DNA from: Magallana gigas
Taxonomy: Eukaryota
Reading direction: 5' to 3'
Length of the DNA: 64,000 nt
NCBI RefSeq assembly: GCF_963853765.1
Contig: NC_088857.1
Span: 1,240,001 to 1,304,000 of the forward strand
A program made the position numbers and the translations under genes. The notes under the pieces are model-generated. The model did no database searches. It saw only the letters and a program-made list of their open reading frames with translations, and was not told the DNA's origin. Below are positions 25,601 to 30,008 of this stretch, piece after piece; position 1 is the stretch's first letter; each line of letters opens with the position of its first letter.

Positions 25601-28600
25601 CTATTTTTCTCAGATCAGAATCCTCATTTTCAGATGGTATAGCACAGGTTACATATTTGTCGATAAAATCGGCTACTGTTTGTTTCCCATGAAGATCTAT
25701 TTTCGGAGCATTGTCTACCCAAAACAAGCAATGCATGTGTGGCGATCCTCTTTGTTGAAATTCAACCCTTTGAAAGAAATCTGCAATTTTCCCAATAGGT
25801 TCCGCTTGTGAATGAATAACGTCACGTTGAAAGACACGGAATCTATGCTCGAACATTCTAGCTACAGTGACAGGATTGCTTCGTAAAATTTCATTTTTCT
25901 CTGACCAGTCTAACGAATCAGGATTTCGTGTGTCGCATTGCTGTTTTAGCAAGGAACTGATTGCATCATTCCATCTATATTCAGCTGAAGAGAAGGAACA
26001 AAACCATGTTGGAATTCCAAGCTGTCTAAGCATTGCAAAGAGATCTTTCTGTATTGCTGACCAGTATGCAGGAGTACCTCTAATTGGCTGCATAAATCTA
26101 ATTGCTTCATCATTCCTCAACAGTTTCGACAACATTTCAGGATTGCGTAACATATCAGAATTGATCGACTTCCCTTTATAATCTTTTGTAATTGCCTTTC
26201 GAATAGAGATCTGAGTTTTTTCAATAACTTGATTTAGTTCTGACATGTACTGGCTGAAGAATATGTAATTTGAATCTTTTGCAAATCTGTTATCTGCATT
26301 CATCAGTCTATTATTGAAATATCGAGCTAGTGTCAGTCTTTTGTCTCTTTGCTCATCAAATGAAAAATTGCCTTTTGGAAAATGGCAGGGAAATGATTTT
26401 GCTTCGTTCCCTGGTTCTTGAAGCATCCGTACCGGGTTATTTCCTTCTGCTGGAGCGATATTGAAAACATCATCGAAGAAATGGTCTAAAACTTCTTGTC
26501 CAATATCTAAAGGTTGAAGGCAAGTGTCAACTGCAATCTGTGCCTGTTCAGTATCTTCGATAAATGATTGAGCATTTTCTTGTTGATTATTTTCATTTGA
26601 TGTTTGAGTTTCATTTTGTTCGGCATCTTCATTTGATTCAAAACTCTCAATGTTTCTGTTGATAGAGATTCCGGTATACCACTTGTTGTTTTGTTTCAAG
26701 TAATCAAGAGCAGTGTTGACATGAGTTGTGTTTATGAATTGATATTCATAATAACTCTTGTAGCTCAGTTTTCTCTTTAATTTTACTCGAAGCAAAAGGT
26801 TCTCGTCACCTTTCAAAGGCAAAGAAGTTGTTTTCTTCAAATCAGATGGCACGCAAACAACAGGACCATGGATATTTTTCTGTCCACCCTTTGGAAGAGC
26901 CATAACTTTCATGAAAGGTATATGTAGGGAAATCAAATGTTGTTCCAAACTATTTAAGCGGGAAAGTTCCACAGGGACAGGATCAAGGTACATGTTATTT
27001 GCTGCTGCTTCGGGTGGAATTTCACCACTAATGATTTTTCGATGACACGTAAAACATATCCACAATGAAGATTTTGAACAATCTTTAGAACATGATGTTT
27101 CACATTGATGCAAAAACGTTTCTTTAATGCAAGTACTAGCAACTTCTGCAGATTTTTCACTTTTGGCATATACCTCTCTATTACACGTCTGTACTTGATT
27201 TTGAAACAATAACCGATGACAGCTGCAACATGCAAAATCTGGACCCCGAGCAGTATTTCTTTTGAATAGGTTAAGGACTTCCTCAACATCTTCAAGTTTG
27301 ATCTTTTTATTTAACCTTCTTTGCTGGACATTTTCTTTTCTCATTCTCTTTACACTGGGAGATGAATGATAGTAGTGTTTGCTGTTCTCTTGGACCTTTG
27401 ATCTGAAACTTTCATCAGTTTTGTATTTTAAGGAGCTAGTACGGAGGAGATTTTCTCTGAACTTATCATCTTTGCTATATTTTTGAACACTAGCTTTTCT
27501 AACGTTTTCCTTATGAATTTCATCCACACGGTATTTATCAATACTTCTTTGTTTCACATTCTTTCTGTGCTTCTCATTCAATCTATATTTTTTTGAGCTC
27601 CTCGTTTTCATTTCTTGTCTATGAACATCATCTGTTTTGTACTTGCTTGTACTTTTTCTCTTACGGGCTGCTCTGTGTACAGTGTCTGTATTATACCTTA
27701 TAATTCTCTTTTTCTTGATTTTCTCTCTGTGTTCAGTATCAGTTTTATACTTGACACTAGCTTTTTTCAACACCTTTTCTTTGTGAGCATTGTCTTTGTA
27801 TTGCTCCCGACTTTTAACCCTACTTCTAAGTCTAGTCGTATTGCGAAAGTCAAGATCAGTTTGATATCTTCTGTTTCTATGGTCTTTGACTAAAATTCTA
27901 AATTCGTCATCTTCCTTGTACTTAAGAAGAGCTTTCCTAAGTTTTTCCTTTCTAAAGTCATCATTTTCTCTGTACTTTTTTCTGAACATTTCCCTTTTGT
28001 ATTGAAGCTTCTTTTCTTCTCTAGCAATACGTATTGTTTGCTTTGAATTTTCTTCACTTCCTTTTTTCTGAAGGTTCTTTTCTGTGCTGTCTCTATCATT
28101 TACAAGTAATTCACCAACTTCCAGAACAACATCGTAATGGTTCTCATTCATGTGGTTTAAATATAACCCATCTCGGTTTGGTCTGATAGATGCAGAAATA
28201 TTTTGTCCTGAGAATTTGAGCCATGTACCATTTGAAAATGTGTAAATATTGACATCCAACATATGAGCTAATCCTAAAATTTCTAACTCTGTTGCCCAAT
28301 TTCCCTCCTTCTCCATTAAAGACACATGGCTTTTGACTGATGATTCGTTAGACCTCAGAAATGTTTGAAATTTATCCTCATGTTCCAAAATGTGATTACA
28401 AATAGCACTTCGAACAGCATAATGGTGACTTTCTGTACAAGTTAGACAATAGGAAACTGCTCTGAAAAAACAATTGCCATCTCCAGTAATATCCTTGGTC
28501 AAAGAGGGTCTACCTAACTCTCGTGAATGCATTTCAATTGTATTTTCATCCTTTTGAAAATATGGTAAGGCTAACTCATTGCAACATTCATGTTTTAAAG

Positions 28601-30008: not shown

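What the first reader, a model, noticed from the sequence alone, without database searches (positions are those of the whole stretch)
28120..29390. Two different deubiquitinase domains in tandem at the N-terminus of the Helentron transposase
Seen: a herpesvirus large-tegument-type protease signature (QGSFHQ…FG…AGTQC, Cys codon 29325-29327; FDSH 28929-28940), followed by an OTU domain (GDGNC, Cys 28470-28472; NHYD, His 28137-28139). The catalytic residues are intact. Known: OTU is common in Helentrons, and tegument-like (C76/VTD) DUBs have been reported in Helitron-type transposons. Inference: two DUBs of different folds may cleave different ubiquitin linkages, protect the transposase or process the polyprotein. 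The insertion lies within an immune-lectin cluster.
Basis: partly seen in the sequence, partly recalled or inferred. Interest (0 to 1): 0.7.

Follow-up and report, generated by a model that had tools for sequence, protein, structure and literature searches.

The report
Known two-deubiquitinase Helentron transposase in oyster

Summary
A 2462-aa ORF (22620-30008, minus strand) carries a VTD/Herpes_teg_N domain (residues ~208-414; Q215, C228, D358-x-H360). An OTU domain follows (residues ~498-634; D510, C513, H624, D626). Next come an 18-residue basic repeat array, DUF6570, Rep, a PIF1 helicase and, after one frameshift, an AP-endonuclease.

Both domains pass Pfam's curated cut-offs. A profile of the family hits the crystal structure of a zebrafish Helitron VTD (8ADD, E 6e-19) and OTUD1 (E 3e-16). 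An AlphaFold model superposes on 8ADD (TM 0.82), M48 (0.67-0.69) and OTUD3 (0.76).

In this ~564-Mb oyster genome at least 97 places match both domains. Catalytic residues are invariant in 20 distinct paralogs. Both domains are under purifying selection (dN/dS 0.11 and 0.19; linker 0.44), and they co-diverge (Mantel r 0.95).

Erven et al. 2022 already reported VTD in Helentrons, molluscs included, and 121 elements that also carry OTU. They showed that the VTD of a zebrafish VTD+OTU element is an active deubiquitinase. This is therefore an ordinary member of a known kind.

Still untested: Helentron OTU activity and the biological role. I found no sequence support for polyprotein processing. The flanking "lectin cluster" is a DM9 gene cluster. 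An earlier scan note had flagged this Helentron.

The parts
21706..39572 (-). Helentron element of about 17.9 kb. Borders are approximate; an earlier scan note puts them at 20896-39627.
   Evidence: Four other copies (C6, C4, C8, C9) are collinear with the window at 97-99% identity from 21706 to 39572, apart from a private insertion.
22620..30008 (-). Main ORF of 2462 aa: VTD, OTU, 18-aa repeats, DUF6570, Rep, PIF1 helicase.
   Evidence: ORF list and translation; Pfam scan.
28767..29387 (-). VTD (Peptidase C76 / Herpes_teg_N) deubiquitinase domain, residues ~208-414. Q215 is at 29364-29366, C228 at 29325-29327, D358 at 28935-28937 and H360 at 28929-28931.
   Evidence: PF04843 30.9 bits. Profile hit to 8ADD at E 5.9e-19 with QC and FDSHSR aligned. 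Q215 and C228 align to M48 Q10 and C23. Foldseek TM 0.82 to 8ADD and 0.67-0.69 to 2J7Q. dN/dS 0.11.
28518..28766 (-). Variable, partly acidic linker between the two DUB domains, residues ~415-497.
   Evidence: pLDDT below 50 for model residues 223-266. Poorly conserved, dN/dS 0.44.
28107..28517 (-). OTU deubiquitinase domain, residues ~498-634. D510 is at 28479-28481, C513 at 28470-28472, H624 at 28137-28139 and D626 at 28131-28133.
   Evidence: PF02338 52.2 bits. OTUD1 4BOP at E 2.8e-16 with DGNC and HYD aligned. Foldseek OTUD3 TM 0.76, rmsd 1.9 A. dN/dS 0.19.
27369..27989 (-). Array of at least 10 strict 18-residue K/R-rich repeats (K-Y-[KR]-x-[DN]-x-x-[FH]-R), residues ~674-880. Unannotated module.
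   Evidence: Period-18 regex hits. No Pfam match. Conserved in relatives. AlphaFold pLDDT 90.5, one 17-residue helix per repeat. No structural analogue found.
26655..27026 (-). DUF6570, residues 995-1118, including the conserved LPxGGQ motif.
   Evidence: PF20209 74.4 bits; motif conservation.
25725..26321 (-). Rep (Helitron_like_N) domain, residues 1230-1428. It has an HUH-type motif (PHMHC); a paired-Tyr motif (YIVSY) lies about 180 residues downstream of this stretch.
   Evidence: PF14214 106.9 bits. Genome scan places it at C5:1265725-1266321. Motifs read in the translation.
23139..24137 (-). PIF1-like helicase with Walker A (GGAGTGKS) and the 2B domain, residues 1958-2290.
   Evidence: PF05970 81.6 bits, plus a weak Pif1_2B_dom hit of 19.0 bits, below its 23.9-bit cut-off.
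22645..22670 (-). Frame break: a 13-bp gap relative to the uninterrupted C6 copy, right after window position 22657. It separates the helicase from the endonuclease.
   Evidence: Three-frame translation; alignment to the C6 copy. The C6 copy has a 2655-aa open frame.
22054..22644 (-). AP-endonuclease (Exo_endo_phos) domain in a 196-aa ORF, in another frame.
   Evidence: PF03372 51.2 bits.
37533..38357 (.). 825-bp insertion private to this copy, inside the non-coding 5' part of the element.
   Evidence: Absent from all four other copies.

Best explanation
Shown: this is a near-intact, recently amplified Helentron (rolling-circle DNA transposon, HLE2 type) in an oyster genome. Its single large protein begins with two papain-fold cysteine deubiquitinase domains of different families. 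The first is a VTD (viral-tegument-like, Peptidase C76) domain with the family's 'flipped' Cys / Asp-x-His triad. An OTU domain with a Cys / His-x-Asp triad follows about 80 residues later. Both are intact, conserved across more than 50 divergent paralogs and under purifying selection. They have stayed linked throughout the diversification of the family in oysters.

Inferred: both are active isopeptidases that travel with the transposase into the nucleus. By homology with the zebrafish Helitron VTDs, which cleave K48, K63 and K11 chains, and with linkage-selective OTUD-type OTUs, they would strip ubiquitin (possibly also NEDD8) from the transposase itself or from host replication and repair factors. 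That would prevent proteasomal degradation or ubiquitin-dependent restriction during transposition. The two domains would supply complementary, non-redundant specificities.
For: Domain identity: Pfam scores above the cut-offs; profile hits to 8ADD and OTUD1 with catalytic motifs aligned; fold matches of TM 0.82, 0.67-0.69 and 0.76.

Helentron identity: Rep, PIF1 and Exo_endo_phos domains; multicopy with 97-99% identical copies of about 17.9 kb.

Selection: the catalytic Q, C, DxH and DGNC...HxD residues are invariant in 20 distinct paralogs. dN/dS is 0.11 for VTD and 0.19 for OTU against 0.44 for the linker. Pairwise distances of the two domains correlate at Mantel r 0.946, with 0 of 2000 permutations reaching it.

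Prevalence: 58 of 62 Rep hits in open frames of at least 2400 aa have both domains. 63 of 74 database relatives, from oysters, scallops, a pearl oyster and teleosts, have both Pfam domains.

Biochemistry in relatives: zebrafish Helitron VTDs, including the VTD of the VTD+OTU element DrT2, react with Ub-PA and cleave K48, K63 and K11 di-ubiquitin. C322A, D451A and H453A mutations abolish activity (PMC9741609).
Against: No activity has been measured for this protein or for any Helentron OTU; the paper says these OTU domains have never been tested. The substrate and the benefit to the transposon are unknown. A shorter Helentron lineage in the same genome appears to manage with VTD alone, so OTU is not universally required. 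This particular copy has a frameshift before the endonuclease, so it may not be autonomous.
Confidence: 0.75

Rival explanations
1. The DUB domains act in cis as processing proteases. They would cut the 2462-aa polyprotein into separate DUB, DNA-binding and RepHel-EN products, as viral OTU and PLpro proteases do.
For: The protein is very long and modular, with disordered linkers. Some viral papain-like DUBs double as polyprotein proteases (general knowledge).
Against: Only five GG dipeptides occur in the ORF and all lie inside folded domains: the VTD core, DUF6570, Walker A and the helicase. The one ubiquitin-tail-like motif, LPxGGQ, is an integral conserved part of DUF6570. It is also present in relatives that lack VTD. 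The inter-domain linkers are not conserved.
Confidence: 0.07
2. At least one domain mainly targets a ubiquitin-like modifier. An example is NEDD8 on cullins, as with herpesviral BPLF1. That would reprogramme the cell towards a replication-permissive state instead of protecting the transposase from degradation.
For: Zebrafish DrT1 VTDs cleave NEDD8-AMC efficiently, and herpesviral tegument DUBs are deneddylases (PMC9741609). A rolling-circle element depends on host replication factors (general knowledge).
Against: The VTD of the only tested VTD+OTU Helentron (DrT2) reacted with ubiquitin only and had negligible NEDD8 activity. Nothing in the sequence discriminates between ubiquitin and NEDD8.
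Confidence: 0.13
3. One of the two domains is catalytically dead in practice and serves as a ubiquitin-binding or scaffolding module, like the inactive VTDs of insects.
For: Inactive VTD copies are common in insects. Pfam aligns only the first 77 of 183 Herpes_teg_N positions in this family.
Against: Every catalytic residue of both domains is invariant in 20 distinct paralogs down to about 47% identity. The family profile and the fold cover the full VTD domain. Purifying selection is strongest on VTD.
Confidence: 0.05

Closest known systems
Zebrafish Helentron DrT2 (VTD + OTU + RepHel), Erven et al. 2022, PMC9741609
   Same: Same architecture: one active-type VTD followed by an OTU, N-terminal to a Helentron RepHel-EN protein. 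The VTD has a Cys/Asp-x-His triad. Teleost relatives were recovered directly with this query.
   Different: The host is an oyster, and identity to fish elements over the DUB pair is about 25-32%. This family also has a long 18-residue repeat array after OTU. No biochemistry exists for the oyster protein.
DrT1-VTD2 crystal structure, PDB 8ADD
   Same: Best sequence-profile match (E 5.9e-19) and best structural match (TM 0.82, rmsd 2.8 A) of the first domain. QC and FDSHSR align with Cys322 and Asp451-x-His453.
   Different: About 20% identity. DrT1 has two VTDs and no OTU.
Herpesvirus large tegument protein DUBs (HSV-1 UL36USP, MCMV M48, EBV BPLF1; Peptidase C76)
   Same: Same fold and same active-site layout. 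Q215 and C228 align to M48 Q10 and C23. Structural TM is 0.67-0.69. The top viral structural matches are nearly all large tegument proteins; the first-ranked one is unnamed.
   Different: Here the domain is fused to a transposase rather than a capsid-associated tegument protein. Identity is only about 15%. No malacoherpesvirus (oyster herpesvirus) match appeared among the top viral hits.
Human OTUD1, OTUD3 and OTUD5 (OTU family)
   Same: Closest solved OTU domains by sequence (OTUD1 E 2.8e-16) and by structure (OTUD3 TM 0.76, rmsd 1.9 A). They share the DGNC Cys loop and the HYD His loop.
   Different: 22-26% identity. No UIM or other accessory ubiquitin-binding element was recognised. Linkage preference is unknown.
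Oyster Helentrons and their tandem-repeat-bearing non-autonomous derivatives (Vojvoda Zeljko et al. 2020, PMC7492417)
   Same: A Helentron in a Crassostrea-type genome, associated with arrays of short repeats at its ends.
   Different: I retrieved only that paper's title and abstract, which concern the non-autonomous, satellite-carrying elements; I did not read its text. This locus is an autonomous-type copy with the full coding region.

Membership tests
VTD / Peptidase C76 (Pfam Herpes_teg_N, PF04843) | Profile match above the curated threshold | tested here: met
   30.9 bits against a cut-off of 25, covering profile positions 1-77 only. The family profile A2 matches 8ADD over its full length at E 5.9e-19, and herpesviral tegument proteins at 6e-8 to 2e-2.
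VTD / Peptidase C76 (Pfam Herpes_teg_N, PF04843) | Catalytic Cys in a G-[ST]-Q-C context, preceded by the conserved Gln | tested here: met
   Q215 and C228 align to M48 Q10 and C23 and to the 8ADD QC motif. Both are invariant in paralogs.
VTD / Peptidase C76 (Pfam Herpes_teg_N, PF04843) | Invariant Asp-x-His motif ('flipped' triad) | tested here: met
   D358-S-H360 in FDSHSR aligns to FDSHSR of 8ADD (Asp451/His453, proven by mutation in PMC9741609).
VTD / Peptidase C76 (Pfam Herpes_teg_N, PF04843) | Papain-like VTD fold | tested here: met
   AlphaFold model with domain pLDDT mostly 75-93. Foldseek gives 8ADD TM 0.82 and 2J7Q TM 0.67-0.69.
VTD / Peptidase C76 (Pfam Herpes_teg_N, PF04843) | Deubiquitinase or deneddylase activity | not testable with these tools
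   Needs recombinant protein with Ub/UBL probes and di-ubiquitin panels.
OTU (PF02338) | Profile match above the curated threshold | tested here: met
   52.2 bits against a cut-off of 23.3. OTUD1 at E 9.5e-10 with the single sequence and 2.8e-16 with the profile.
OTU (PF02338) | Cys loop D-G-N-C and His loop H-x-[DNE] | tested here: met
   D510-G-N-C513 and H624-Y-D626 align to the OTUD1 DGNC and HYD motifs. D, C and H are invariant in the 20 oyster paralogs; across the 26-row alignment D and H stay invariant and C is nearly so. The third residue varies D/E/N among paralogs.
OTU (PF02338) | OTU fold | tested here: met
   Foldseek gives OTUD3 4BOU TM 0.76 at rmsd 1.9 A, OTUD1 0.70-0.71 and OTUD5 0.61-0.70.
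OTU (PF02338) | Isopeptidase activity | not testable with these tools
   The paper states that transposon OTU domains have not been tested. Full-text searches found no later paper on Helentron OTU.
Helentron (HLE2 rolling-circle transposon) | Rep (HUH) plus PIF1-type helicase in one ORF | tested here: met
   PF14214 106.9 bits and PF05970 81.6 bits. The HMH motif, the YIVSY motif and Walker A are seen in the translation.
Helentron (HLE2 rolling-circle transposon) | C-terminal AP-type endonuclease | tested here: met
   Exo_endo_phos 51.2 bits in ORF 22054-22644. In this copy it is displaced by a 13-bp gap; in the C6 copy it is in frame, giving a 2655-aa ORF.
Helentron (HLE2 rolling-circle transposon) | Multicopy with defined termini and subterminal hairpins | tested here: inconclusive
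   Five copies at 97-99% identity share the stretch 21706-39572. A perfect palindrome GGGTCTTCCGTT...AACGGAAGACCC lies just beyond, at about 39595-39621. Exact termini and target site were not resolved, because arrays of repeats flank the copies.

The most novel reading that the evidence does not exclude
The two DUB domains are non-redundant. The never-tested Helentron OTU would have a linkage or UBL specificity distinct from the K48/K63/K11 activity of the VTD. The conserved, structurally unmatched 18-residue helical repeat array right behind them would be a new nucleic-acid- or chain-binding module that positions the DUB pair on the transposition complex. The three layouts in this one genome (VTD then OTU, OTU then VTD, and VTD only) would then offer a natural experiment on what each domain contributes.
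Probability: 0.25. Interest if true: 0.45.

Novelty: already known. Interest (0 to 1): 0.2.

Why it matters
The finding adds little as a discovery. VTD in Helentrons, its co-occurrence with OTU, its presence in molluscs and its DUB activity were all published in 2022.

Its value is as a well-documented instance. This oyster genome holds dozens of open, divergent Helentron ORFs in which both DUB domains are under strong purifying selection. Two domain orders and a likely VTD-only lineage sit side by side.

That makes it a good system for two open questions left by the 2022 paper. Are Helentron OTU domains active, and on which linkages? And what does deubiquitination do for rolling-circle transposition?

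Tried and rejected
1. A single-sequence phmmer search against the PDB gave only weak tegument hits (E 0.002-1) and missed 8ADD. A profile of paralogs and orthologs was needed.

2. Polyprotein processing: I looked for LxGG/RGG sites. All GG dipeptides lie inside folded domains, and LPxGGQ belongs to DUF6570 and is conserved in VTD-less relatives. Rejected as unsupported.

3. The 18-residue repeat module found no explanation. There was no Pfam match at E<=10 and no Foldseek PDB match. VIA-align wide gave Z<=5.6 on generic helices only. The ESM-Atlas feature hits scored below 0.9 and carried no informative family name (one low-ranked cluster had a 23% GBP_repeat share).

I used genome-wide family scans and coordinate cross-matching instead. 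Those tables score at most 150 candidates, so a missing OTU row is not proof of absence.

5. A link to oyster herpesvirus: the viral structure library returned mostly large tegument proteins of vertebrate herpesviruses (the first-ranked hit is unnamed) plus assorted viral OTUs, with no malacoherpesvirus protein among the top rows.

6. I did not run complex prediction, because no ubiquitin sequence was available by reference and no binding claim rests on it.
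Full report
**Observation.** The finding lies in a single 2462-aa ORF on the minus strand, 22620-30008.
- C228 in AGTQC is at 29325-29327.
- FDSH (residues 357-360) is at 28929-28940.
- C513 in GDGNC is at 28470-28472.
- H624 in NHYD is at 28137-28139.

The Pfam scan of the ORF gives, in order:

| Domain | Residues | Bits | Curated cut-off |
|---|---|---|---|
| Herpes_teg_N | 212-286 | 30.9 | 25 |
| OTU | 509-592 | 52.2 | 23.3 |
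| DUF6570 | 995-1118 | 74.4 | 24.3 |
| Helitron_like_N | 1230-1428 | 106.9 | 28.9 |
| PIF1 | 1958-2162 | 81.6 | 25.9 |

C76 is supported.

**Domain identity.** Single-sequence searches of the PDB gave strong OTU hits (OTUD1, E 9.5e-10) but only weak tegument hits. Even so, Q215 and C228 align with Q10 and C23 of MCMV M48.

A profile of 26 paralogs and orthologs (A2) matches chain 8add_A over its full length at E 5.9e-19. It matches OTUD1 at 2.8e-16. 8ADD is the crystal structure of the zebrafish Helitron domain DrT1-VTD2. Its triad Cys322/Asp451/His453 was proven by mutagenesis (PMC9741609).

In the printed alignment, QC and FDSHSR of the oyster family sit on the QC and FDSHSR of 8ADD. DGNC and HYD sit on those of OTUD1.

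An AlphaFold model of residues 195-640 has mean pLDDT 77.7, and both domains score mostly 75-94. The linker, model residues 223-266, scores below 50. Foldseek against the PDB gives:

| Domain | Structure | TM-score | rmsd |
|---|---|---|---|
| First (VTD) | 8ADD | 0.82 | 2.8 A |
| First (VTD) | M48, 2J7Q | 0.67-0.69 | 4.0-4.7 A |
| Second (OTU) | OTUD3, 4BOU | 0.76 | 1.9 A |
| Second (OTU) | OTUD1 | 0.70-0.71 | 2.0 A |
| Second (OTU) | OTUD5 | 0.61-0.70 | 2.2-2.8 A |

In the viral structure library the top matches are nearly all herpesviral large tegument proteins; the first-ranked row is an unnamed protein.

The catalytic sets are Q215/C228/D358-x-H360 for VTD and D510/C513/H624-x-D626 for OTU.

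**The host element.**
- The ORF continues, after a frame break, into a 196-aa ORF (22054-22644) that is an Exo_endo_phos AP-endonuclease, 51.2 bits. Together with the HUH-type Rep and the PIF1 helicase this defines a Helentron.
- The break is a 13-bp gap relative to another copy, right after window position 22657. That copy, on contig C6, is 100% identical over the DUB region in the genome scan (one residue differs in the tblastn check) and has an uninterrupted 2655-aa frame.
- Comparison with four copies at 97-99% identity shows that the element spans about 21706-39572, roughly 17.9 kb.
- This copy has a private 825-bp insertion at 37533-38357.
- Arrays of a ~467-bp repeat, homologous to window 21243-21709, flank the copies.
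- An earlier scan note (s1-403335) had already flagged this Helentron at 20896-39627.
- Oyster Helentrons associated with tandem repeats are published (PMC7492417).

**Is the pair functional?** The genome (~564 Mb, oyster) has at least 97 places matching across both domains, at 100% down to 32% identity. About half of them lie in open frames of at least 2400 aa.

In 20 distinct stop-free paralogs every catalytic residue of both domains is invariant, while the linker varies freely.

| Segment | Median Nei-Gojobori dN/dS |
|---|---|
| VTD | 0.11 |
| OTU | 0.19 |
| Linker | 0.44 |

Pairwise distances of the two domains are tightly correlated: Mantel r 0.946, with 0 of 2000 permutations reaching it. 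The pair has therefore been inherited as a unit.

**Co-occurrence survey.** I cross-matched genome-wide scans with the Rep, Herpes_teg_N and OTU profiles.
- 62 Rep hits lie in frames of at least 2400 aa.
- 58 of them have both DUB domains in the same frame.
- The other four have a VTD hit and no OTU row. The tables are capped at 150 scored candidates, so absence is not shown.

Two orders coexist. Most copies, including this family, run VTD, OTU, Rep. At least nine copies run OTU, VTD, Rep. On the minus strand of C3, for example, OTU is at 3448582, VTD at 3447895 and Rep at 3445291. Frames of 2021-2176 aa show VTD about 1.9 kb before Rep and no OTU row, which suggests a VTD-only lineage.

Among 74 database relatives, 63 carry both Pfam domains. 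They come from Crassostrea/Magallana, Saccostrea, Pecten, Argopecten, Pinctada and several teleosts. The scallop proteins have the OTU-then-VTD order. A pipefish protein has VTD-OTU-VTD-OTU.

**What is known.** Erven et al. 2022 (PMC9741609) state the following:
- Most non-viral VTDs sit in Helentron ORFs.
- 121 of these elements also contain OTU.
- Autonomous copies keep all catalytic residues.
- Zebrafish Helitron VTDs, including that of the VTD+OTU element DrT2, react with Ub-PA and prefer K48, K63 and K11 chains.
- Transposon OTU domains have never been tested.
- The DUBs might protect proteins needed for transposition from proteasomal degradation.

HELIANO (PMC11417382) lists Herpes_teg_N in the same ORF as RepHel in HLE2 elements. 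Later full-text searches found no paper on Helentron OTU activity.

**Mechanism.**
- Shown: two intact, selected and linked DUB-type domains sit at the N-terminus of a Helentron transposase.
- Inferred: both are active isopeptidases that remove ubiquitin (possibly NEDD8) from the transposase or from host factors, with complementary specificities.
- Polyprotein processing has no sequence support. All five GG dipeptides lie inside folded domains. LPxGGQ is part of DUF6570 and is conserved in VTD-less relatives.

**Context.** The Helentron sits next to a Ty3/Gypsy retrotransposon (ORF 40893-45899). The pair lies between DM9-repeat genes at about 17.4-17.8 kb, 53.6 kb and 59.8-60.25 kb, and two more DM9 loci lie just beyond the window. 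DM9 proteins are mannose-binding pattern-recognition lectins in C. gigas (PMC5712788, PMC4932603). The insertion is intergenic.

**Side observation.** Residues ~674-880 form at least 10 strict 18-residue K/R-rich repeats. Pfam does not recognise them. They are conserved after OTU in most relatives, teleosts included. AlphaFold predicts one 17-residue helix per repeat at pLDDT 90.5. No structural analogue turned up.

**Limits.** No more genome sequence could be fetched. Exact termini were not resolved. No biochemical claim can be tested here.

Noticed in passing
window 27369-27989 (minus), ORF residues ~674-880: At least 10 strict 18-residue K/R-rich repeats (K-Y-[KR]-x-[DN]-x-x-[FH]-R) lie between OTU and DUF6570. 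Pfam finds nothing. They are conserved from oysters to teleosts. AlphaFold predicts a stack of 17-residue helices at pLDDT 90.5, with no PDB or Atlas analogue. This may be an undescribed nucleic-acid-binding module of this Helentron clade.
   Followed up: partly
G000 genome-wide, e.g. C3:3445291-3448944 (minus) and C3:26200827-26203253 (plus): The same genome holds a Helentron lineage with the reverse order (OTU, VTD, Rep; at least 9 copies). It also holds a shorter-ORF lineage (about 2020-2180 aa) with VTD and no OTU row in the capped scan. Scallop relatives also have OTU before VTD, and a pipefish protein has VTD-OTU-VTD-OTU.
   Followed up: partly
window 40893-45899 (+) and 45976-46665 (+): A Ty3/Gypsy retrotransposon ORF of 1668 aa (gag, protease, RT, RNase H, integrase) lies directly beside the Helentron. 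A 229-aa ORF follows with a sub-threshold C2H2 zinc-finger hit (20.2 bits against a cut-off of 25.2). An earlier scan note covers it.
   Followed up: no
window 17367-17840, 53609-53779, 59784-60251; also G000:C5:1309612-1317125: A cluster of DM9-repeat (mannose-binding PRR lectin) genes flanks the transposon pair. The hit at 53.6 kb contains stop codons and may be a pseudogene.
   Followed up: partly
window 21243-21709; also 20882-21160: A ~467-bp unit next to the element's 3' end recurs in arrays with roughly 800-bp spacing beside the other copies of this Helentron, on either side. This looks like the tandem-repeat-bearing Helentron derivatives described in oysters.
   Followed up: partly
window 30009-39572: About 9.5 kb of the element upstream of the ORF has no ORF of 100 aa or more. 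It contains 135-bp tandem repeats (31531-32272), a (TC)n run (30384-30442) and a private 825-bp insertion (37533-38357). Its content is unexplained.
   Followed up: no
window ~39595-39621: A perfect palindrome, GGGTCTTCCGTT-gaaa-AACGGAAGACCC, lies just outside the shared homology. A related GGGTCTTCCGTT motif follows the border in the other copies. It is a possible terminal hairpin.
   Followed up: no
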